DNA of 64,000 bases from sequence record OP292654.1. The stretch is one strand, 5' to 3'. Shown piece by piece: positions 1,927-15,634 of this stretch (the first letter of the stretch is position 1; each line of letters opens with the position of its first letter). The notes beneath the pieces were generated by a model. That model was not told the origin of the DNA. It worked only from the letters and a program-made list of their open reading frames with translations, and did no database searches. A program made the translations under genes and the position numbers.

Positions 1927-2338
1927 GATTATCTGCGGGTTTCCTGGTATTGGTAAAAGTACTGTAGTACAGAACAATGATAAAGTAATTGACTTAGATA
2001 GTTCTGGCTACAGTAAGATACAAACATTTCCATTGAACTATATTCAGGCTATTATTGATGCTGAGAATGATGGATATGAATATATACTGATCAGTACTCA
2101 TGCATCAGTTAGAAACTTGCTTCAAACACTTGGTATGAAGTATACCAATGTGTATCCTGAAATTGATTTAGGTGAAGAATATATAGAACGTTATAGAGAA
2201 CGTGGTTCTCCAGAAAGTTTTATTAACTTCCTTGAAGAAAATTGGGATGATTTCATCTTCGAATTACAGTATGATGAATCAGATTATATCGAACTTGAAC
2301 CTGGTCAATTTCTTTCAGATGTTTTGAAAAATATTTGA
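1916..2338 (+). CDS. P-loop nucleotide kinase-like protein
   Basis: N-terminal IICGFPGIGKS Walker A followed by IDLDSS. Confidence 0.65.
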   Translation: MAAKIICGFPGIGKSTVVQNNDKVIDLDSSGYSKIQTFPLNYIQAIIDAENDGYEYILISTHASVRNLLQTLGMKYTNVYPEIDLGEEYIERYRERGSPESFINFLEENWDDFIFELQYDESDYIELEPGQFLSDVLKNI

Positions 2339-2347
2339 AAAAAAGAT

Positions 2348-2375
2348 GAAACGATTCAAAAGTTTCTGGTATAAT
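2348..2375 (+). promoter_or_regulatory. GAAACG-N16-TATAAT class promoter
   Basis: GAAACG at 2348, TATAAT at 2370; repeated motif. Confidence 0.7.
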
Positions 2376-2392
2376 ATAGTACATAAGGCAGC

Positions 2393-2514
2393 GGAATCTT
2401 ACAGCAAAAATTAAACCTTTTGATGAAAACAAAACGACGGGGTTCAATTCCCCACCCACGAACATCTGCCTTATTCAAATAGTGGGAGCTTGGTGCTGGA
2501 TAAAAAGAGATTCC
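2393..2514 (+). ncRNA. CAGCAA-family element with permuted tRNA-like module
   Basis: GGAATCT/AGATTCC terminal stem, ACAGCAA, T-arm GGGG-TTCAATT-CCCC, closed acceptor-like CCCAC/GTGGG. Confidence 0.7.
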
Positions 2515-2537
2515 TGAATTTAATTAAGAAAATTTTT

Positions 2538-2565
2538 GAAACGAATCAAAAATTTGTGGTATAAT
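2538..2565 (+). promoter_or_regulatory. GAAACG-N16-TATAAT class promoter
   Basis: GAAACG at 2538, TGTGG-TATAAT at 2560. Confidence 0.7.
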
Positions 2566-2582
2566 AAAAGTATTAGCAACAC

Positions 2583-2698
2583 GAAATCTTACAGCAAACA
2601 AAACAATATTTTTTATGCGAAAAAAACGGTGCGGTTCGAATCCGCAGCAGCCATGTTGCTATGTAGGCTGTGCTTGGGGCCAGAAAAACAAAGATTTC
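2583..2698 (+). ncRNA. CAGCAA-family element with anticodon loop GCG and permuted tRNA-like module
   Basis: GAAATCTT/AAGATTTC stem; TTTTT-AT GCG AA-AAAAA; T-arm TGCGG-TTCGAAT-CCGCA; GCAGCC/GGCTGT acceptor-like stem. Confidence 0.75.
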
Positions 2699-2723
2699 AG
2701 TTTCCTCAAACAAGGATAACAAA

Positions 2724-2882
2724 ATGGCATCAGCAGAAGAAAACATGGTAATTGTTCGTAAAATCCTTAGTGGAATTGACAACAATAACCTTCCTGAAGT
2801 AATGTCTGAATTAGGTTTTGAAGTGACAAAGAGTACAGAAAAAAGTACAGAATGGTCATTGAAAGAATCTGAACAAACATAA
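2724..2882 (+). CDS. small hypothetical protein
   Basis: AAGGA RBS before ATG 2724 (track ORF start overlaps the ncRNA). Confidence 0.55.
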   Translation: MASAEENMVIVRKILSGIDNNNLPEVMSELGFEVTKSTEKSTEWSLKESEQT

Positions 2883-2884
2883 TT

Positions 2885-2956
2885 GTTCCCATCGTCTATC
2901 GGTTAGGACGCCTCCCTTTCAAGGAGGAAAGCGGAGTTCGATTCTCCGTGGGAACG
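2885..2956 (+). tRNA. trnE: tRNA-Glu(TTC)
   Basis: full cloverleaf, CCTCC-CT TTC AA-GGAGG, TTCGATT T-loop; CCA not encoded. Confidence 0.95.
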
Positions 2957-2960
2957 CTAA

Positions 2961-3066
2961 AAGAATCGTCCAGCAAACATAACTCTTTATATTTCATTTG
3001 GCGAAAAACACCTTCGGTTCGAATCCGATTTACCACTGGCTGTGGGGATAGAAAACAACGATTCTT
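2961..3066 (+). ncRNA. CAGCAA-family element with anticodon loop TTG and T-arm
   Basis: AAGAATCGT/ACGATTCTT stem; TTTC-AT TTG GC-GAAA; TCGG-TTCGAAT-CCGA; CCAC/GTGG. Confidence 0.75.
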
Positions 3067-3094
3067 GTCTTTTAATTAAACCGAATTAGCACTC

Positions 3095-3250
3095 GGATTC
3101 TGACAGCAACACATAAAATCTTAAAATCTATCAAATAATGAGATTGGATACTCGGACGTAAAACTCCCTTCGTGTCCACCTGGTAACTAGGGAGATAATA
3201 ATTAGTTATATTGAGCCGTGCTAGGTAGTTGCTCAATTAATAGAGAATCC
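3095..3250 (+). ncRNA. CAGCAA-family element, long divergent cargo
   Basis: GGATTCT/AGAATCC stem followed by GACAGCAA; about 135-nt interior without a clear T-arm. Confidence 0.5.
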
Positions 3251-3291
3251 AGCGTACAAAGTACTTAAATCCTATTGGACAGTACTTTTTT

Positions 3292-3384
3292 GGAAGATTG
3301 GCAGAGCTTGGCTTATTGTACCTGACTTGAAATCAGGCGGGGGTTAATAGCCCTCCGTGGGTTCGAATCCCACATCTTCCTCCA
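3292..3384 (+). tRNA. trnS: tRNA-Ser(TGA)
   Basis: cloverleaf with long variable arm, CCTGA-CT TGA AA-TCAGG, encoded CCA. Confidence 0.95.
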
Positions 3385-3392
3385 AAATTTAT

Positions 3393-3514
3393 GAGAAAGT
3401 AGCTCAGTTGGTAGAGCAGGTAGAAACCCAAAATTACAGTACTGTAATTTCGCAGCAACCATACTTCATCCACTTTTAATGGCCTGGTCGTTGGTTCGAG
3501 TCCAACCTTTCTCG
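3393..3514 (+). tRNA. trnK: tRNA-Lys(TTT) interrupted by a 49-nt insertion (3421-3469)
   Basis: removing 3421-3469 gives a perfect cloverleaf: GAGAAAG/CTTTCTC, GGCCA-CT TTT AA-TGGCC, GTTGG-TTCGAGT-CCAAC. Confidence 0.85.
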
Positions 3515-3516
3515 CA

Positions 3517-3577
3517 TAGAATCTAACAGCAAACATATTCTTATTCAATTGGTGAAAACAAAGATTATAGATTCTAG
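3517..3577 (+). ncRNA. CAGCAA-family minimal element (loop AA TTG GT)
   Basis: TAGAATCTA/TAGATTCTA stem, ACAGCAA, TTC-AATTGGT-GAAAAC. Confidence 0.7.
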
Positions 3578-3630
3578 TTTTTAATTTAGTTTAAAAATAC
3601 TAAATAAAGTTGAAGCCATTCAACAAACAT

Positions 3631-3727
3631 GGTAAAGTGGCAGAGCTTGGCTTATCGCAGTCGCCTGGAAAGCGGCCAGGTTAGGTAATCCCTAGCCTCG
3701 GAGGTTCAAATCCTCTCTTTACCGCCA
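3631..3727 (+). tRNA. trnS: tRNA-Ser(GGA)
   Basis: cloverleaf, long variable arm, CT GGA AA loop, encoded CCA. Confidence 0.93.
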
Positions 3728-3746
3728 ATACACACAAGGAAGAAAA

Positions 3747-3962
3747 ATGTTTTACGATTATTACTACAAAGTAGATGGTGCTTTGCGTCGTCATACTAGT
3801 GCTGAAGAATTGAATGACGAACAAGTTAGCAATATCTTCGGAGCACAAAAATCAGTAGTTCTACTTGAGCCAGTAGTTTTTGAACGTGAAGTTCAAGACG
3901 AAGAAACCAAGAAGAAAAGTACTGTTAAAGAACACGTTGGCTATATCGGCTACGTAGAATAA
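3747..3962 (+). CDS. hypothetical protein
   Basis: AAGGA RBS. Confidence 0.65.
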   Translation: MFYDYYYKVDGALRRHTSAEELNDEQVSNIFGAQKSVVLLEPVVFEREVQDEETKKKSTVKEHVGYIGYVE

Positions 3963-3969
3963 AAGAATT

Positions 3970-4028
3970 TGGAATCCTCCAGCAACCACACAAAAACTCA
4001 AACTTTTACTTTGACTATGTGGATTCCA
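3970..4028 (+). ncRNA. CAGCAA-family minimal element with Lys(TTT)-type anticodon stem-loop
   Basis: TGGAATCC/GGATTCCA stem, CCAGCAA, TCAAA-CT TTT AC-TTTGA. Confidence 0.75.
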
Positions 4029-4045
4029 GTATTAATTGAGAGATA

Positions 4046-4276
4046 ATGATTATGGATAATCAACATAAACAAATTAAAGGGTATCGAGACTTGAATCAGC
4101 AAGAAATTAATGCGATGAACGCAATTAAGGACTTGGCTGCTAAAGTGGGCGATATGATCGACGCACTTGAAGATCATCCTGATATTGATAAACGTTGGCT
4201 GGCTATAGCTAAGACTGACCTACAGAAAGGTTTCATGTCGGCAGTACGGAGCGTAGCAAAACCGGATTCATTCTAA
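4046..4276 (+). CDS. acb2: anti-CBASS cyclic-nucleotide sponge Acb2 homologue
   Basis: MDNQHKQIKGYRDL..EI..MN.IK ... RWLAIAKTDLQKGFM...R..AKPDSF closely resembles my recollection of the Acb2/Vs.4 family N- and C-terminal motifs. Confidence 0.85.
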   Translation: MIMDNQHKQIKGYRDLNQQEINAMNAIKDLAAKVGDMIDALEDHPDIDKRWLAIAKTDLQKGFMSAVRSVAKPDSF

Positions 4277-4744
4277 ATGAGCAAATACGATGTGTTATAC
4301 GAAATTGGAGAAGAATATTTCATTTCGTTATTACATACGCCGGAACGATGTAGATCAACTATTGATGGATTATCTAATACCGTGAATTTTAATGTAAATG
4401 ATCATTATTCTTCACGAGACGGGGTAATCCATTTTTATTTGTCGGACGAAAAGGAAAACACCTTTTCAGTTGTTGTTGACTTGTTAGCTAACAGGTTCAG
4501 CGTACACTACTGGAGCGATGATGACGATATTGATACTGACATATTCAAGGTCAATAAACTCCCTTACAATATTAGTGAGGAATGGCATTTCCAGTTGAGT
4601 ACTAAAGCAGAATTTCCGTTCAGTTATGAATTCATAACACGGTTACGCGAGTTCGTTAAGTACTTCGAAGATATGATGAATGTTAATCATAGCATAGACG
4701 CACTTAGGGAACATCATAACATTGTACCATATCCTTGTAGGTGA
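4277..4744 (+). CDS. hypothetical protein, EE-x-FQ-x-[ST] paralog family
   Basis: SEEWHFQLST motif shared with 9865, 10248, 17279, 17797. Confidence 0.7.
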   Translation: MSKYDVLYEIGEEYFISLLHTPERCRSTIDGLSNTVNFNVNDHYSSRDGVIHFYLSDEKENTFSVVVDLLANRFSVHYWSDDDDIDTDIFKVNKLPYNISEEWHFQLSTKAEFPFSYEFITRLREFVKYFEDMMNVNHSIDALREHHNIVPYPCR

Positions 4745-4748
4745 TATT

Positions 4749-4985
4749 ATGGAAACCATCGTAGATGAAATCCTGAATAGTGCTAATATGCACGAAGCTG
4801 TTCGTAAGTTTGTAGACGCAAACGAACGTTCAAATAATATTGATTTGTACCAAGCACTGACTTATGTGTTCTTTGAAATGGATGAAAAAGATCCTCGCTT
4901 CGAAGAACTGAACGATGTACTTGACGCAATGAGTGGTCATTGTAACAAAGCATGTTACATCGGCACTGGTGATTATGCCTGGTAA
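4749..4985 (+). CDS. hypothetical protein
   Basis: AGGTG RBS before ATG 4749. Confidence 0.65.
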   Translation: METIVDEILNSANMHEAVRKFVDANERSNNIDLYQALTYVFFEMDEKDPRFEELNDVLDAMSGHCNKACYIGTGDYAW

Positions 4986-4997
4986 CAGGCATTAAAT

Positions 4998-5070
4998 GGG
5001 AATATAATTCAGTTGGTAGAATGCTCGACCGATAATCGAGTCGTCGCTGGTTCGAGTCCAGCTATTCCCA
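4998..5070 (+). tRNA. trnI: tRNA-Ile(GAT)
   Basis: cloverleaf GGGAATA/TATTCCC, CTCGA-CC GAT AA-TCGAG. Confidence 0.9.
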
Positions 5071-5154
5071 CTAAGTAGTACTGTGAAATTATCCAACACA
5101 ATAGGTAGCACTTTGGATGAATCAGTAAGCCTATATCGTACTACAAATAAATTA

Positions 5155-5290
5155 AAGAATTCAACAGCAACTAAATGTTAACCCAAATAGCGGCCTTATG
5201 GCGTGTAGGTTCGAGTCCTACGATCTATGTCAGTACGAATAGTGATGGTGAAATAGGTAGACACGGCTATCCAATAAACGATGAATTCTT
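5155..5290 (+). ncRNA. CAGCAA-family element with circularly permuted class II (Leu-like) tRNA body
   Basis: AAGAATTCA/TGAATTCTT stem; 3' half (ATAGC, variable hairpin GCC-TTAT-GGC, GTAGG-TTCGAGT-CCTAC) precedes 5' half (GGTGAAATAGGTAGACAC D-arm, GCTAT). Confidence 0.75.
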
Positions 5291-5308
5291 GTATTAATTT
5301 GGAAAAAT

Positions 5309-5569
5309 ATGGATATTTTATACGCTAAAGTAACTGAGCTTAATGCTGGTTACGAAGGTGATCGAATAAACGCAAAAGCGTTAGACCCGGATCATTACTA
5401 CGTTGTTAGTTATGTTGATATGGGAAGTTCTAGTACTTCAATATACTTAGAAAATGACCGTAAATCATATAACTCTGTAAATTTTACTTTCTACACTATT
5501 GTTGACGGTAAACATAAAGAGTACAACATATTCAGTGACCCGAATTATAATCCGTACCTTAACCTATAA
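5309..5569 (+). CDS. hypothetical protein
   Basis: ORF with GGA RBS. Confidence 0.65.
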   Translation: MDILYAKVTELNAGYEGDRINAKALDPDHYYVVSYVDMGSSSTSIYLENDRKSYNSVNFTFYTIVDGKHKEYNIFSDPNYNPYLNL

Positions 5570-5578
5570 AGGTGATAT

Positions 5579-5719
5579 ATGTCAGGCAACGCACATAGCT
5601 CTAAACGTAACGACCATAGTTATGAAACGCTGAATCGCAATAATCCGCATCATTCGCGTCGTAATGACCATAGTTACGAAACCCTGAATCGTAATAACCC
5701 GCATCAACCTAAACGTTAA
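5579..5719 (+). CDS. 46-aa micropeptide with duplicated RNDHSYETLNRNNPH motif
   Basis: AAAGGTG RBS; 54-bp-period direct repeat differing mainly at synonymous positions. Confidence 0.65.
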   Translation: MSGNAHSSKRNDHSYETLNRNNPHHSRRNDHSYETLNRNNPHQPKR

Positions 5720-5736
5720 TGCGTTAGTAACAAATT

Positions 5737-5851
5737 TGGAATTTAACAGCAATCACTTTCTATCACGCAGCATGTCGCAGGTTCGAGTCCTGTCAGTACT
5801 AGTACTGTAGCTCAGTTGGGAGAGCAGCCGCCTAAAACGAAATAAATTCCA
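5737..5851 (+). ncRNA. CAGCAA-family element with circularly permuted tRNA-Asp-like body (anticodon ATC)
   Basis: TGGAATTTA/TAAATTCCA stem; CT ATC AC-GCAGC-ATGTC-GCAGG-TTCGAGT-CCTGT-CAGTACT then AGTACTG-TA-GCTC AGTTGGGA GAGC-A-GCCGC. Confidence 0.8.
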
Positions 5852-5974
5852 GTCTTAATCAAATTCACCAGGCGTACTATGGTGTGATACGGATAGCATG
5901 TTATCCTATAAGGTCAGAATAGAATACGTATTAGTCTCTTGAAAAGACTTCTGTAAACTCAATTTGTACTCATT

Positions 5975-6029
5975 TAGAATCTACCAGCAATTAAAACTTC
6001 TCGGATATAGAAAACAAAAATAGATTCTA
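5975..6029 (+). ncRNA. CAGCAA-family minimal element (loop CG GAT AT)
   Basis: TAGAATCTA/TAGATTCTA stem, CCAGCAA, TTCT-CGGATAT-AGAA AAC. Confidence 0.7.
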
Positions 6030-6053
6030 GCTTTAATTGAATAAAACCGGATT

Positions 6054-6115
6054 TGGAATCCAGCAGCAACCATAAATGAACTCAACTGTTAATTGAAAAC
6101 TCAAAATGGATTCCA
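6054..6115 (+). ncRNA. CAGCAA-family minimal element with Asn(GTT)-type anticodon stem-loop
   Basis: TGGAATCCA/TGGATTCCA stem, GCAGCAA, TCAA-CT GTT AA-TTGA AAAC. Confidence 0.8.
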
Positions 6116-6132
6116 GTATTTTTAAGTGAAAT

Positions 6133-6633
6133 ATGAGCAGAAAACTTGAAATTGATAATCGTGTAGTTCAGGAAATGATTTCACGAGGAAGTACTATTCA
6201 GCAAATAGCTAATACATGTAACGTATCAGCAACAACGATGAAAAAGTATTTCAAAGATTTGAGTTTAAAAACTCACACAATGATTCAACGTGAATCTTCA
6301 ATATGTTTAAAACACAATATTGAATTTTCACAACGAACAGACGGCAAACGTGTATGTATGAAATGTAATTCTGAAGGAGTTACAGAACATCGTAAACGAT
6401 TAAAGATAAAAGCCGTTGAATATCTTGGTGGTAAATGTGAACGATGCGGATATGATAAATCAATAGCTGCGTTAGACTTCCATCATAAAGACCCAAGTCA
6501 GAAAGATTTTGGAATTTCAGATGAAGGTGTTACCCGTTCATGGGAAGTTATTCAAAGTGAATTAGACAAATGTATGTTAGTTTGTGCTAATTGTCATCGA
6601 GAAATTCATGAAGAACTTAATTTAGAAAATTAA
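6133..6633 (+). CDS. HNH homing endonuclease
   Basis: GGKCERCGY...ALDFHHKDP...CMLVCANCHREIH; N-terminal HTH-like segment. Confidence 0.85.
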   Translation: MSRKLEIDNRVVQEMISRGSTIQQIANTCNVSATTMKKYFKDLSLKTHTMIQRESSICLKHNIEFSQRTDGKRVCMKCNSEGVTEHRKRLKIKAVEYLGGKCERCGYDKSIAALDFHHKDPSQKDFGISDEGVTRSWEVIQSELDKCMLVCANCHREIHEELNLEN

Positions 6634-6643
6634 GAAAAAAGAT

Positions 6644-6671
6644 GAAACGCCACAAGAAATTGTGGTATAAT
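6644..6671 (+). promoter_or_regulatory. GAAACG-N16-TATAAT class promoter
   Basis: GAAACG 6644, TGTGG-TATAAT 6666, upstream of tRNA-Asn. Confidence 0.7.
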
Positions 6672-6690
6672 ATAAGTAAGAAAAACAAAA

Positions 6691-6762
6691 GGTTGTGTCG
6701 TATAAAGGTTATTACGGAGAGCTGTTAACTCTTTTATCTTGGTTCGATTCCAAGCATAACCG
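6691..6762 (+). tRNA. trnN: tRNA-Asn(GTT)
   Basis: cloverleaf, GAGAG-CT GTT AA-CTCTT. Confidence 0.92.
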
Positions 6763-6810
6763 CAAAGTGATGTTTGGGCGGTTTGATAATATATAAATCC
6801 AAACAGAACA

Positions 6811-6856
6811 AAGAATCTTCCAGCAATTAAAACGGTTGAATAATATATAGATTCTT
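6811..6856 (+). ncRNA. CAGCAA-family minimal element
   Basis: AAGAATCT/AGATTCTT stem, CCAGCAA; short interior with only a weak hairpin. Confidence 0.6.
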
Positions 6857-6860
6857 GATT

Positions 6861-6936
6861 AGGCTCATGGTGTAATTGGCTAACACACCGGATTTTGATT
6901 CCGGCATTCTAGGTTCGAGTCCTAGTGGGCCTGCCA
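6861..6936 (+). tRNA. trnQ: tRNA-Gln(TTG)
   Basis: cloverleaf, CCGGA-TT TTG AT-TCCGG, encoded CCA. Confidence 0.95.
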
Positions 6937-7081
6937 ATTTAAAGATTTCATCACTTCCTGTGTGAAACAAGCTGGTATTTCCCCCTGCTTGTAAAATTAT
7001 CGAAAGGGAACCGAGTAGCACCTGTACAGGTCAGTTCGTAAAGAACAAGTATGTACAGTACTGACAGCGGCAGTACAACCT

Positions 7082-7154
7082 GCGAGTATCATATAGAGGC
7101 TTAATATGCTGTCCTTCCAAGTCGGTCACATCGGTTCGAATCCGATTACTCGCT
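7082..7154 (+). tRNA. trnG: tRNA-Gly(TCC)
   Basis: GCGAGTA/TACTCGC acceptor, CT TCC AA loop, one anticodon-stem mismatch. Confidence 0.88.
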
Positions 7155-7281
7155 CAGATTAAGTAAACAAACAAACAAAAAGGTAAATCCTATGATGCTA
7201 TAGAAATTCAGTACTGGTCCACCGGATAAAGTTAATTCAGAACAAAACACTAAATTAATTACTATCCAAAAGGAACATACT

Positions 7282-7608
7282 ATGTTGACCAAAGAACAAT
7301 TCATTACTGTAACAACAACCTGGAAACTTGAAAAAGAGCATACTGTACACGAGCATATTATCTATAATATTCTTCGGGGTAAGTCGGCTGATGAAGGTTT
7401 CGTGCCATTGACTGATTGGGGTCGCCTACATGCGAGTCAAAACAATCCTTGGTTTAACTATGACAATGCGATTCTTGAATTGCGTTACCGCTTGAATGAA
7501 AAGCGTTATGGTTATGAAGGTACAGTAAAACATTATTCCGAAGTTTTCGGCATTGATTTTACACCGGACTTAGTTGCTGCTATCGTCGCAGAACTTAAGA
7601 CCAAATAA
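7282..7608 (+). CDS. hypothetical protein
   Basis: AAGGA RBS. Confidence 0.7.
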   Translation: MLTKEQFITVTTTWKLEKEHTVHEHIIYNILRGKSADEGFVPLTDWGRLHASQNNPWFNYDNAILELRYRLNEKRYGYEGTVKHYSEVFGIDFTPDLVAAIVAELKTK

Positions 7609-7614
7609 CAAATT

Positions 7615-7678
7615 TAGAATCTAACAGCAAACACTATTTTATTTCACTTATCTTGAAAACCGAAAATAATAGATTCTA
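7615..7678 (+). ncRNA. CAGCAA-family minimal element with anticodon-like loop TAT
   Basis: TAGAATCTA/TAGATTCTA stem, ACAGCAA, TTCA-CT TAT CT-TGAA AAC. Confidence 0.75.
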
Positions 7679-7693
7679 GTCTTTATTCTCAAA

Positions 7694-7960
7694 ATGAGGA
7701 AAACTGATATGGCACGTGAGTTTATGCACTTTGCTTACTTCAAAGAAGTAACCAAAATGGAGCAAGCAAAATCTGGTATTAAACCACTAGAAATAGAAGA
7801 TTTTGCGAACCAAATCGAAGAAATGGTTCAAAAGATGATCGATGCTGGTGAAGATGAAGGTATGTTTCGTATAACTTTACCTGATAACTTACCGCCAGAA
7901 AAAGCAGTTGAGTTCATTGACGAAGTTATGCGTCGTCTAAATGATCGTTTCGGTGGATAA
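7694..7960 (+). CDS. hypothetical protein
   Basis: ORF in co-directional run. Confidence 0.6.
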   Translation: MRKTDMAREFMHFAYFKEVTKMEQAKSGIKPLEIEDFANQIEEMVQKMIDAGEDEGMFRITLPDNLPPEKAVEFIDEVMRRLNDRFGG

Positions 7961-13277: not shown

Positions 13278-13351
13278 ATAGTAGTAAGTCAATTGGTAAC
13301 GACTCCCTATTAAGATTAGGAGAATGTGTGGTTCAAATCCCTCCTACTATT
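13278..13351 (+). pseudogene. degenerate tRNA-like gene, anticodon AAG
   Basis: ATAGTAG/CTACTAT acceptor, AGTC/GACT D-arm, CCTA-TT AAG AT-TAGG; T-stem largely mispaired. Confidence 0.6.
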
Positions 13352-15553: not shown

Positions 15554-15634
15554 GAGTATATAGCTTAATTATAGAGCAGCGATTTTAACAGGTAATGCTG
15601 GTCGTCAGTGTAGGTGGAACCCCTATTATACTCA
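15554..15634 (+). pseudogene. tRNA-like element with expanded (17-nt) anticodon loop and altered T-loop
   Basis: GAGTATA/TATACTC acceptor, GCTT/GAGC D-arm, GCGAT/GTCGT stem, GTAGG-TGGAACC-CCTAT. Confidence 0.6.

What the first reader, a model, noticed from the sequence alone, without database searches (positions are those of the whole stretch)
2393..7678. Thirteen-copy ncRNA family (stem-CAGCAA ... AAAC-stem) that frames tRNA parts
Seen: 13 elements at 2393, 2583, 2961, 3095, 3421 (inside tRNA-Lys), 3517, 3970, 5155, 5737, 5975, 6054, 6811 and 7615. Twelve share a 7-9 bp terminal stem whose sequence covaries (GAATCT/AGATTC, GAAATCTT/AAGATTTC, GAATCGT/ACGATTC, GAATTCA/TGAATTC, GGATTCT/AGAATCC); the 3421 copy is the opened form. 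An invariant CAGCAA lies 1-2 nt 3' of the 5' strand, most copies have a (GA)AAAC-like run before the 3' strand, and most have a GT.TT(T)AATT-like tail. The cargo varies: a bare anticodon stem-loop, a T-arm + loop-closed acceptor + D-loop remnant, or a whole permuted tRNA body. Established: bacterial YrlA-type Y RNAs have the same topology (end-paired Ro60/Rsr-binding stem plus permuted tRNA-like domain), but their stem motif is GNCGAA-type and they usually occur as 1-2 copies. Inference: a protein-recognised RNA scaffold family expanded and diversified across many tRNA identities, i.e. a possible undescribed phage tRNA-mimic system.
Basis: partly seen in the sequence, partly recalled or inferred. 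Interest (0 to 1): 0.95.

Follow-up and report, generated by a model that had tools for sequence, protein, structure and literature searches.

The report
Phage Y-RNA-like family with CAGCAA handle
The thirteen repeats are real small structured RNAs with one constant handle (a helix followed by CAGCAA) carrying different tRNA pieces, and across many unrelated phages the same RNAs sit next to, or share a genome with, a Ro60-like protein gene, so they are most likely an undescribed class of phage Y RNAs.

Summary
Twelve elements at the stated coordinates have exact 7-9 bp terminal stems with CAGCAA 1-2 nt after the 5' strand (12 found; 0.37 expected). The thirteenth is the same module, closed into a hairpin, as a 49-nt insert in tRNA-Lys.

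The window is Xanthomonas phage XbC2 (Mimasvirus). The helix (P1) covaries within the genome and between phages, while CAGCAA stays fixed.

The same module, with unrelated helix sequences, occurs in Eneladusvirus, crAss-like contigs, FelixO1, and Listeria, Bacillus, Aeromonas, Ralstonia, Sinorhizobium and T4-like phages. There it lies beside a DUF2828/DUF7788 gene. In 80 metagenomic loci the density is 2.7 hits/kb in the 300 nt upstream, against 0.02-0.11 hits/kb more than 1 kb away on either side.

XbC2 encodes this protein next to an RNA ligase, about 198 kb upstream of the cluster. An AlphaFold model of the GAP32 homologue matches only Ro60/Rsr structures over its full length.

Best reading: a new, expanded class of Y-RNA-like partners of a phage Ro60-like protein, with tRNA-derived cargo. 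They fail the YrlA tests (GNCGAA absent, 41.9 bits against the 69-bit threshold). Binding and expression are untested. A splicing or circularisation role is not excluded.

The parts
2346..2375 (+). sigma-70-like promoter with extended -10, driving element 1
   Evidence: 10/12 match, TG before the -10. The predicted start lies about 11 nt upstream of P1.
2383..2391 (+). 5' leader of element 1, complementary to 2466-2474 in the loop that closes the acceptor-like stem
   Evidence: The pairing is kept by a compensatory change in a relative (G/C in XbC2, T/A in L042).
2393..2514 (+). element 1: P1 GGAATCT/AGATTCC, CAGCAA at 2402; cargo is a T arm, a loop-closed acceptor-like stem and a mini D hairpin
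2536..2565 (+). sigma-70-like promoter with extended -10, driving element 2
   Evidence: 11/12 match
2583..2698 (+). element 2: P1 GAAATCTT/AAGATTTC, CAGCAA at 2592; same cargo type as element 1. Leader 2574-2580 pairs with 2655-2661.
2961..3066 (+). element 3: P1 AAGAATCGT/ACGATTCTT, CAGCAA at 2971; T arm plus a short closed acceptor. It starts 4 nt after tRNA-Glu.
   Evidence: 31.4 bits, E=0.00027. P1 is flipped by compensatory changes in fHe-Yen9-04.
3095..3250 (+). element 4: P1 GGATTCT/AGAATCC, CAGCAA at 3104; 156 nt, no T arm, possible pseudoknot in the cargo
   Evidence: P1 covaries in CBB, GAP32 and fHe-Yen9-04.
3393..3514 (+). tRNA-Lys(UUU)-like gene carrying the module as a 49-nt insert (3421-3469) between anticodon-stem positions 28 and 29
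   Evidence: (tRNA model, 46.1 bits, with insert). With the insert left out, ARAGORN calls a canonical tRNA-Lys.
3517..3576 (+). element 5: short form, P1 TAGAATCTA/TAGATTCTA, CAGCAA at 3527; starts right after the tRNA-Lys-like gene
   Evidence: 62.3 bits
3970..4028 (+). element 6: short form whose cargo is a Lys-UUU-like anticodon stem-loop (CAAA CTTTTAC TTTG)
   Evidence: 58.2 bits
5155..5290 (+). element 7: permuted class-II-like tRNA body (long variable arm, T arm, acceptor halves, D arm). Leader 5136-5142 pairs with 5232-5238.
5737..5851 (+). element 8: complete permuted class-I tRNA-like body (anticodon-stem 3' strand, T arm, 6-bp acceptor closed by UA, D arm, anticodon-stem 5' strand). 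The module stands where the anticodon loop would be.
   Evidence: (YrlA model, 41.9 bits, at 5770-5828)
5975..6029 (+). element 9: short form with an inner hairpin whose loop is YGGATAT
   Evidence: 62.0 bits
6054..6115 (+). element 10: short form whose cargo is an Asn-GUU-like anticodon stem-loop (TCAA CTGTTAA TTGA)
   Evidence: 69.9 bits; z = -3.5
6811..6856 (+). element 11: minimal 46-nt form between tRNA-Asn and tRNA-Gln
   Evidence: 39.5 bits
7615..7678 (+). element 12: short form between two small ORFs
   Evidence: 64.7 bits

Best explanation
The thirteen copies are members of a widespread, so far uncatalogued family of phage non-coding RNAs.

Shown here: the constant part is a handle, a 7-10 bp helix (P1) followed on its 5' strand, after 0-3 nt, by single-stranded CAGCAA and faced by an A-rich strand.

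Inferred: this handle is the binding site of the phage's Ro60-like protein of the DUF2828/DUF7788 family (XbC2_180). The arrangement mirrors canonical Y RNAs, which bind Ro60/Rsr through an end-paired stem with a GNCGAA/CGAA motif on the 5' strand.

Shown here: the variable part (cargo) is tRNA-derived. It can be a whole circularly permuted tRNA body, a T arm with a closed acceptor, a bare anticodon stem-loop, or a D-loop-like hairpin. In a sister class of genes the handle is a hairpin inserted at position 28/29 of otherwise canonical tRNAs.

Inferred, by analogy with Ro60-Y RNA particles: the RNP would use the tRNA-like cargo to recruit or occupy tRNA-recognising factors. Candidates are the RNA ligases that flank the protein gene, the Rnl1/Pnkp healing-sealing enzymes of the close relative CBB, host exonucleases, or host anticodon nucleases. 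The outcome would be protection or quality control of translation RNA during infection, as a counter-defence function.

In XbC2 the RNA genes have multiplied to 13 and moved into the tRNA cluster. Two of them have their own strong promoters.
For: (1) Real RNA helix. P1 is exact in 12 of 12 copies and far above chance. It covaries. It forms in every minimum-energy fold, with CAGCAA mostly unpaired. All copies are on the transcribed strand, and two follow extended -10 promoters.

(2) Constant motif, free helix. The same architecture with unrelated P1 sequences and invariant CAGCAA occurs in FelixO1, Listeria LP-048, Aeromonas 4_4572, Cronobacter S13, Bacillus Skywalker, Ralstonia RSP15, Sinorhizobium phiM12, crAss-like contigs and a metagenomic contig. 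A covariance model built only from Mimasvirus/Eneladusvirus copies and three from crAss-like contigs finds the other lineages at E down to 1e-6.

(3) Linkage to the protein gene. In 9 loci (87 kb) there are 27 hits on the gene strand, 0 on the opposite strand, and 1.0 expected. In 80 IMG/VR loci (792 kb) there are 151 against 17, and 65 of 80 loci are positive. Density is 2.67 hits/kb in the 300 nt upstream of the gene against 0.02-0.11 hits/kb more than 1 kb away on either side.

(4) The same genome has the protein. XbC2_180 lies at record 104031-105545 with DUF2828 (1.3e-32) and DUF7788 (2.4e-42), next to an RNA ligase.

(5) The protein has the Ro60 fold. An AlphaFold model of the GAP32 homologue has pLDDT 87.8. 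Its nine best PDB matches are all Ro60/Rsr/TROVE, over the full length: phage phiLo 9KOP at 1.5e-9, then Xenopus, human and Deinococcus. HHpred in the CBB paper supplement gave Rsr at 5.8e-35.

(6) Precedent. YrlA RNAs lie within 4 kb of Ro60 on the same strand and mimic tRNA (PMC4201824). In Thermus phage phiLo, Ro60 binds two upstream Yrl RNAs that have a 5'-3' stem and a CGAA motif (PMC12135203). The Felixounavirus homologue Bas63 gp130 counters the ppl defence system, and its authors guessed that some neighbouring 'tRNA genes' might be Y RNAs (bioRxiv 10.1101/2024.10.10.617714).
Against: No binding, expression or end-mapping data exist for any member.

In XbC2 and its jumbo relatives the RNAs lie about 198 kb from the protein gene, and none is within 5 kb of it. 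The link in this genome therefore rests on co-occurrence, not adjacency.

The defining YrlA motif GNCGAA is absent, and the Rfam YrlA model is not reached.

Pfam's TROVE model does not hit the protein, and sequence or profile searches of the PDB find no Ro60. The Ro60 relationship therefore rests on fold similarity and on HHpred from a paper.

The precise 28/29 insertion, which leaves canonical tRNAs when removed, is also what an intron would look like.

15 of 80 protein loci have no detected RNA within 5 kb, and other neighbours (an AAA ATPase, RNA ligases) could be the true partner.
Confidence: 0.72

Rival explanations
1. The module is a small intron or processing cassette. Inside tRNAs it would be cut out and the halves rejoined by the phage Pnkp/Rnl1 or Rnl2 (RtcB in the Listeria phage). 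In the permuted copies the same reaction would release or circularise the cargo, as in permuted intron-exon arrangements or the permuted tRNA genes of Cyanidioschyzon. The Ro60-like protein could be a cofactor or unrelated.
For: Six independent tRNA-like genes carry the module at the same place. They are Lys in XbC2 and in GAP32, Glu in GAP32 and CBB, and a UCA and a GAU version in fHe-Yen9-04. Each becomes a canonical ARAGORN tRNA with a perfect 5-bp anticodon stem when the insert is left out, and none is called with it. The anticodon-stem halves covary (GG+CCA/TGGCC, CG+AGC/GCTCG, CG+ACT/AGTCG). The phages encode Rnl1, Pnkp and a second RNA ligase. Listeria LP-048 has RtcB 1.3 kb from the protein gene.
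Against: No known ribozyme or intron family matches, even at E<=10. The splice-site sequences are poorly conserved. Every insert-bearing tRNA has an ordinary paralogue in the same phage, so no essential tRNA depends on removal. In the complete permuted bodies (5737, L068) the module replaces the anticodon loop, so rejoining would give no anticodon. Seven of the 12 copies have no tRNA body at all, and one natural variant has lost the body yet kept the handle. The tight linkage to a Ro60-fold gene is not predicted by this model.
Confidence: 0.12
2. The RNAs are free-standing decoys or sponges for host anticodon nucleases or other tRNA-directed defence enzymes. The handle would only stabilise the ends, and no Ro60-like partner would be needed.
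For: The displayed anticodon loops are Lys-UUU, Asn-GUU, Glu-UUC and Tyr-GUA types, which from my own knowledge are classic anticodon-nuclease targets. Orthologous copies switch anticodon identity while keeping the stem (Lys to Ile-GAU, Glu to UCA). The phages carry tRNA repair genes. Jumbo-phage tRNAs are thought to offset tRNA-cleaving defences (PMC7824862).
Against: This does not explain the invariant CAGCAA across hosts as distant as Listeria, Bacteroidales-type crAss hosts and Sinorhizobium. It does not explain the positional linkage to the DUF2828 gene. Many copies have no anticodon-like loop (5975, 6811, 7615). It is compatible with the main explanation as the downstream effect of the RNP rather than a true alternative.
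Confidence: 0.08
3. The repeats act at the DNA level, as promoter, terminator, recombination or homing-endonuclease sites or a MITE-like selfish repeat, and the RNA structure is incidental.
For: The copies are intergenic. An HNH endonuclease gene (6133-6633) lies in the cluster. The stems are near-palindromic and a T-rich tail follows them.
Against: The arm spacing varies from 46 to 156 nt. Compensatory changes keep pairing rather than sequence. There is a strict strand bias (12:1 in the window, 151:17 in 80 loci). The arms enclose T arms and tRNA-like folds. No terminator-like site on the + strand coincides with the elements.
Confidence: 0.03

Closest known systems
Bacterial/phage YrlA-type Y RNAs (Rfam RF02553; Chen et al. 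2014, PMC4201824)
   Same: The 5' and 3' ends pair into a stem. A short conserved single-stranded motif lies on the 5' side. The body is a circularly permuted tRNA-like domain in the order variable region, T arm, closed acceptor stem-loop, D arm. The gene is linked to a Ro60-fold protein and to RNA ligases.
   Different: The motif is CAGCAA (CAGCNA in Gram-positive phages), not GNCGAA. The best Rfam score is 41.9 against a threshold of 69. The partner is of the DUF2828/DUF7788 family, not Pfam TROVE. There are 3-13 copies per genome rather than 1-2. Most copies have no full tRNA-like domain. In XbC2 the RNAs are not adjacent to the protein gene.
Yrl1/Yrl2 of Thermus phage phiLo with phage Ro60 (Hu et al. 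2025, PMC12135203; PDB 9KOP, 9L5Y)
   Same: Phage-encoded. Small RNAs just upstream of the Ro60-type gene. A 5'-3' stem flanks a bulge that holds the recognition motif. The phiLo protein is the best structural match of the Mimasvirus protein model.
   Different: The phiLo motif is CGAA and has experimental binding data; here nothing is tested. phiLo has two RNAs with no tRNA pieces reported.
Circularly permuted tRNA genes (Cyanidioschyzon merolae type) and non-canonical archaeal tRNA introns
   Same: The 3' half lies upstream of the 5' half, with the acceptor halves joined by a short linker and the ends paired. There is also a class of tRNAs with a short insert at a non-canonical position (28/29).
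   Different: I did not look for a bulge-helix-bulge motif. No splicing endonuclease is listed among the annotated genes I read. The complete permuted copies lack an anticodon loop. The host is a bacteriophage.
Introns in tRNAs of Lak megaphages (Devoto et al. 2019, PMC6784885)
   Same: Phage tRNAs with enigmatic, highly conserved inserts. The published tRNA-Tyr insert contains a T-arm-like segment and a GGAAAC run.
   Different: The one published insert I read has no CAGCAA. Its position was forced to the canonical site by the prediction program. Any relationship is untested.

Membership tests
YrlA / bacterial Y RNA (RF02553) | Reaches the Rfam gathering score of the YrlA covariance model (69 bits) | tested here: not met
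   the best match is 41.9 bits at 5770-5828 (model positions 24-84 only). A 23.8-bit match at 3333-3448 spans a tRNA. No other element matches at E<=10.
YrlA / bacterial Y RNA (RF02553) | GNCGAAN0-1G motif near the 5' end (PMC4201824) | tested here: not met
   none of the 13 copies has it near the 5' end. Element 2961 alone has GGCGAA, at 3000, 40 nt in. All 13 have CAGCAA instead.
YrlA / bacterial Y RNA (RF02553) | Paired 5' and 3' ends enclosing T, acceptor-like and D stem-loops in permuted order | tested here: met
   fully met in 5737 and 5155. Elements 2393, 2583 and 2961 have a T arm, closed acceptor and reduced D. It is not met in the seven short copies.
YrlA / bacterial Y RNA (RF02553) | Encoded within about 4 kb of a Ro60 orthologue on the same strand | tested here: inconclusive
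   Not met in XbC2: the gene is at record 104031-105545, the RNAs start near record 306294, and nothing lies within 3.5 kb of the gene. Met in FelixO1, Listeria, Aeromonas, Bacillus, Ralstonia, Sinorhizobium, S13 and crAss-like contigs.
YrlA / bacterial Y RNA (RF02553) | Physically bound by the Ro60-type protein | not testable with these tools
   No binding data are available.
Ro60 / Rsr (TROVE) proteins, for the presumed partner XbC2_180 | Ring of alpha-helical (HEAT-like) repeats followed by a von Willebrand A domain | tested here: met
   Model of the GAP32 homologue: pLDDT 87.8, N-terminal helices and C-terminal alpha/beta domain. The top nine PDB matches are all Ro60/Rsr/phage Ro60, aligned over 517-575 columns with TM 0.42-0.59. 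Weak VWA_2 match in the CBB homologue CBB_183.
Ro60 / Rsr (TROVE) proteins, for the presumed partner XbC2_180 | Recognised by sequence as TROVE or Ro60 | tested here: not met
   Pfam returns only DUF2828 and DUF7788, with no TROVE. phmmer and profile searches of PDB sequences find no Ro60.
tRNA (RF00005) | Matches the tRNA covariance model or ARAGORN as one contiguous cloverleaf | tested here: not met
   Only 3393-3514 matches (46.1 bits, with the 49-nt insert), and ARAGORN does not call it. None of the 12 terminal-stem elements is called.
Known self-cleaving ribozymes, group I/II introns and other Rfam families | Any match to the 4227 Rfam models | tested here: not met
   nothing relevant at E<=10 in 2300-7800 apart from tRNA and the partial YrlA match.
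Functional permuted tRNA genes | Joining the ends gives a tRNA with a 7-nt anticodon loop | tested here: not met
   By inspection of 5737-5851 and L068:5980-6092, the module lies directly between anticodon-stem positions 31 and 39, and the stem has a central mismatch at 29:41.

The most novel reading that the evidence does not exclude
The handle is not only a binding site. Together with the Ro60-like protein and the adjacent RNA ligase it would form a phage-encoded, protein-dependent RNA cutting-and-joining system. That system would remove the handle from position 28/29 of tRNAs, amounting to protein-dependent tRNA splicing carried out by a phage in bacterial cells. It would also release or circularise the tRNA pieces framed by the permuted copies, giving the phage a set of processed tRNA fragments or spare tRNAs on demand.
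Probability: 0.1. Interest if true: 0.95.

Novelty: new variant of a known kind. Interest (0 to 1): 0.8.

Why it matters
DUF2828/DUF7788 proteins occur in at least 710 deposited phage genomes, including the model phages FelixO1 and Listeria P100/A511-type phages, and in thousands of metagenomic sequences.

One member, Bas63 gp130, has been shown by others to counter a bacterial defence system. Its RNA partners were only guessed at.

A defined RNA family with a simple signature now gives these proteins candidate ligands. The signature is a helix, CAGCAA, and a location just upstream of the gene.

The family extends Y RNAs well beyond the GNCGAA class. It explains many 'pseudo', 'undetermined' or over-long tRNA annotations in phage genomes.

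It also shows an unusual evolutionary pattern, in which one protein handle is combined with whole, partial or permuted tRNAs and is even inserted into tRNAs.

It makes the question of what phage Ro60 particles act on directly testable.

Tried and rejected
- **Rfam, gathering and E<=10.** No family explains the copies. Known ribozyme, intron and retron families are therefore rejected as far as Rfam can see.
- **ARAGORN.** None of the elements is called.
- **Fixed 19-nt pattern scan of IMG/VR.** Most of the 103 loci were chance matches without a stem. Only jumbo relatives and four loci (three named contigs) related to crAss-like phages were real.
- **First MAFFT alignment.** It put four crAss-type rows one column out of register. 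I dropped them before building the model.
- **The covariance model.** It scores the long copies poorly because of the large inserts, and it found no further member in the window.
- **tblastn of the crAss-type protein against the window and the Mimasvirus tRNA regions.** It found nothing. The Mimasvirus homologue was found through the supplement of the CBB paper and a second tblastn.
- **Sequence and profile searches of the PDB.** They did not find Ro60. Only the fold search did.
- **Two reviews I wanted (PMC10870794, PMC5062991).** Neither is held.
- **Ideas considered and dropped.** These were CRISPR-repeat mimics, type III antitoxin repeats, retron ncRNA (no reverse transcriptase is annotated in the parts of these genomes that I read, and there was no Rfam match), RNase P/RNase III/RNase E processing sites, Hfq ARN sites, and a DNA motif overlapping GANTC (not universal in P1).

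Full report
**What the window is.** Region 2300-7700 is 100% identical to Xanthomonas phage XbC2 (OP292654.1, genus Mimasvirus, 367.9 kb) and 93% identical to Erwinia phage Kaldavass. More distant relatives are GAP32, CBB, Serratia BF and Yersinia fHe-Yen9-04. Window position equals record position minus 303901. The region is the start of a tRNA cluster: ARAGORN finds 21 tRNAs between 2885 and 19744. None of the elements is annotated in any record.

**The observation.** A mechanical search found exact stems of 7-9 bp at all twelve stated places, with CAGCAA 1-2 nt after the 5' strand. No other hit passed with stem >=7 bp and offset 1-2 on the + strand. Dinucleotide shuffles of the window give 0.37 such hits on average (max 4). 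The opposite strand gives 1. Searching only for GAATC-type inverted repeats, without asking for CAGCAA, returns nine copies, and all nine have CAGCAA. Every minimum-energy fold contains the terminal helix (P1) and leaves CAGCAA largely unpaired. T-arm hairpins appear in 2393, 2583, 5155 and 5737, and a full T/acceptor/D set in 5737. The thirteenth copy is a 49-nt insert (3421-3469) in a tRNA-Lys-like gene. It has GAAAC, a 9-bp hairpin and then CAGCAA, which is the same junction with the helix closed by a loop instead of open at the RNA ends.

**Covariation.**
- Within XbC2 the helix reads GGAATCT/AGATTCC, GAAATCTT/AAGATTTC, AAGAATCGT/ACGATTCTT, GGATTCT/AGAATCC, AAGAATTCA/TGAATTCTT and TGGAATTTA/TAAATTCCA.
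- Orthologues in relatives change both strands together. For example AAGAATCG/CGATTCTT in GAP32 becomes AGGATTCG/CGAATCCT in fHe-Yen9-04.
- On an alignment of 29 short copies, 6 of 10 pairs change on both sides, 92% of cells pair, and no shuffle or slid register comes close.
- A covariance model built from these copies finds no further copy in the window.

**A sister class: the module inside tRNAs.** GAP32, CBB, fHe-Yen9-04 and Cronobacter S13 have over-long 'tRNA', 'pseudo' or 'undetermined' genes of 110-127 nt. In six that I dissected, the module lies between anticodon-stem positions 28 and 29. Leaving it out gives a tRNA that ARAGORN calls, whereas the intact sequences are not called. The six calls are Lys-UUU twice, Glu-UUC twice, one UCA and one Ile-GAU. 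The two stem halves stay complementary while their sequence changes. Orthologous genes have switched anticodon (Lys to GAU, Glu to UCA). Each has an ordinary paralogue in the same phage. This is what an intron would look like, but it is equally what a tRNA-shaped carrier of the handle would look like.

**The family is much wider than jumbo phages.**
- A pattern scan of IMG/VR turned up true copies in four loci (three named contigs of 128-175 kb) whose primase resembles crAss-like phages. Their helices are unrelated: AGAAGACT/AGTCTTCT, GGAATGC/GCATTCC, AGAATAC/GTATTCT.
- One of these copies exists in two natural forms. The 113-nt form has a permuted tRNA body. The 59-nt form has the body deleted between two GCAGC repeats while the handle is intact.
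- Directly upstream on the same strand lie a 595-aa DUF2828+DUF7788 protein and an AAA ATPase.

**The protein link.**
- The CBB genome paper's supplement lists CBB_183 as DUF2828, with HHpred best hit Deinococcus Rsr (5.8e-35). It was detected in virions and lies next to an RNA ligase.
- tblastn finds homologues in 710 phage records, including XbC2 itself. XbC2_180 (record 104031-105545) is preceded by an RNA ligase.
- An AlphaFold model of the GAP32 homologue (pLDDT 87.8) matches, as its nine best PDB hits and over its full length, only Ro60-type structures: phage phiLo Ro60, Xenopus and human Ro60, and Deinococcus Rsr. After those come isolated vWA domains.
- Sequence methods alone do not see this relationship.

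**Co-location.**
- I fetched the gene neighbourhood in eight further cultured phages. Stem-CAGCAA elements on the gene strand are present within about 3.5 kb in seven. The counts from the strict scan are FelixO1 4, Listeria LP-048 3, Aeromonas 4_4572 7, Bacillus Skywalker 4, Ralstonia RSP15 3, Sinorhizobium phiM12 2 and Cronobacter S13 1. S13 also has two insert-bearing tRNAs next to its single element.
- The eighth, Staphylococcus Alsa_4, has copies with CAGCCA/CAGCTA just downstream of the gene.
- Over nine loci the count is 27 on the gene strand, 0 on the other, and 1.0 expected. A few of the 27 are probably chance.
- In 80 IMG/VR loci found through the protein, the count is 151 against 17, and 65 loci are positive. 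Density is 2.67 per kb in the 300 nt upstream of the gene, 0.59 per kb in the 300 nt downstream, and 0.02-0.11 per kb beyond 1 kb.
- The model trained almost entirely on Mimasvirus/Eneladusvirus copies recognises the other lineages (E 1e-6 to 1e-3). On that model-fitted alignment 9 of 10 helix pairs change on both sides.
- The jumbo Mimasvirus/Eneladusvirus group is the exception. Its protein loci have no RNA nearby, and the RNAs sit in the tRNA cluster instead.

**Interpretation.** Canonical Y RNAs pair their ends, carry a short motif on the 5' strand that Ro60 contacts, and in bacteria carry a permuted tRNA-like domain. They are encoded beside Ro60, often with RtcB (PMC4201824). The Thermus phage phiLo Ro60 binds two upstream RNAs of this design through CGAA (PMC12135203). 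The present family has the same design, the same kind of neighbour (a Ro60-fold protein, RNA ligases, RtcB in Listeria phage) and the same position. It differs in having another motif and another protein subfamily. I therefore read it as the Y-RNA-like partner class of DUF2828-type phage Ro60 proteins.
- **Shown:** the RNA architecture, its conservation and covariation, the protein fold, and the genomic linkage.
- **Inferred:** binding through P1+CAGCAA, and the role of the tRNA-derived cargo in engaging tRNA-recognising enzymes or defence nucleases.

The only functional datum is from others: the Felixounavirus homologue Bas63 gp130 counters the ppl defence system, and its authors speculated that nearby 'tRNA genes' might be Y RNAs. 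I found no paper describing these RNAs. [quoted passage not shown]

**What remains open.**
- The insert-bearing tRNAs keep the splicing or circularisation reading alive, and the phages do have healing and sealing enzymes.
- The 5' leaders of elements 2393, 2583 and 5155 pair with the loop that closes the acceptor-like stem. Compensatory changes in relatives support this pairing, and I cannot explain it.
- Element 3095 has a different, possibly pseudoknotted cargo.

**Membership.** The family fails two defining YrlA tests (motif and Rfam score) and so should not be filed as YrlA. It works like a Y RNA and is best called a new variant of that kind.

Noticed in passing
window 2383-2391 with 2466-2474; 2574-2580 with 2655-2661; 5136-5142 with 5232-5238: The 5' leader just upstream of P1 is complementary to the loop that closes the acceptor-like stem inside the same element. 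In relatives the pairing is kept by compensatory changes (AAGGCAG/CTGCCTT against AAGGCAT/ATGCCTT; TAGCAAC/GTTGCTA against AAGCAAC/GTTGCTT). It would make a long-range pseudoknot, and I have no explanation for it.
   Followed up: partly
window 3095-3250: This 156-nt family member has no T arm. By eye the cargo could form an H-type pseudoknot (GGACG.../CGTGTCC with CTCCCT/AGGGAG) plus a D-arm-like hairpin. It is conserved in Kaldavass, CBB, GAP32 and fHe-Yen9-04, with covarying P1.
   Followed up: partly
L005:9013-9126 and L005:10846-10966 (Yersinia phage fHe-Yen9-04) against L004:14215-14328 and L003:14167-14293: Orthologous insert-bearing tRNA-like genes have changed anticodon while keeping the stem paired. 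The Glu-UUC type reads UCA (opal-reading) in fHe-Yen9-04, and the Lys-UUU type reads GAU.
   Followed up: partly
L068:5980-6092 against L009:3953-4011 (- strand): The same element occurs in two related crAss-like contigs, once with a permuted tRNA body (113 nt) and once with the body cleanly lost between two GCAGC repeats (59 nt). Short copies can therefore arise from long ones by deletion while the handle stays under selection.
   Followed up: yes
window 5737-5851; L068:5980-6092; L101:2777-2890 (- strand): In complete permuted bodies the 5-bp anticodon-like stem always has a mismatch at the central pair 29:41 (C.A, A.A, A.C). This is the position next to which the module is inserted in the tRNA class.
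   Followed up: no
window 6133-6633: An ORF annotated as HNH endonuclease in Kaldavass and fHe-Yen9-04 lies in the middle of the element cluster, directly after elements 5975 and 6054. FelixO1 and Ralstonia RSP15 also have HNH genes among their tRNAs and elements.
   Followed up: no
window 13278-13351 and 15554-15634: Rfam's tRNA model finds two further tRNA-like sequences (33.6 and 40.8 bits) that ARAGORN does not call.
   Followed up: no
L118 (XbC2 record 100531-109042), L115, L111, L112, L068: Recurrent neighbours of the DUF2828 gene are an RNA ligase with a PHA02142 OB domain (XbC2, CBB), RtcB (Listeria LP-048), RNA ligase 2 and an AAA/STAND-like ATPase (Aeromonas 4_4572; the ATPase also in crAss-like contigs), and a ribosome hibernation-type factor (XbC2_185 S30EA; 'ribosome associated inhibitor A' in Staphylococcus Alsa_4).
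   Followed up: partly
L115:5144-5218 and the following ~130 nt; L114:3311-3388 and L114:677-738: In Staphylococcus and Bacillus phages some copies carry CAGCCA, CAGCTA or CAGCGA instead of CAGCAA. The insert-bearing tRNAs of Mimasvirus, Eneladusvirus and S13 carry CGGCAT, CAGCAT or CAGCAC. The fifth position of the motif, and to a lesser extent the second and sixth, is therefore not absolutely fixed.
   Followed up: partly
PMC6784885, supplementary Table S6: The published intron of a Lak megaphage tRNA-Tyr contains a GGAAAC run and a T-arm-like segment (AATTGGTTCGAATCCAATT). The enigmatic Lak tRNA introns may be a related phenomenon.
   Followed up: no
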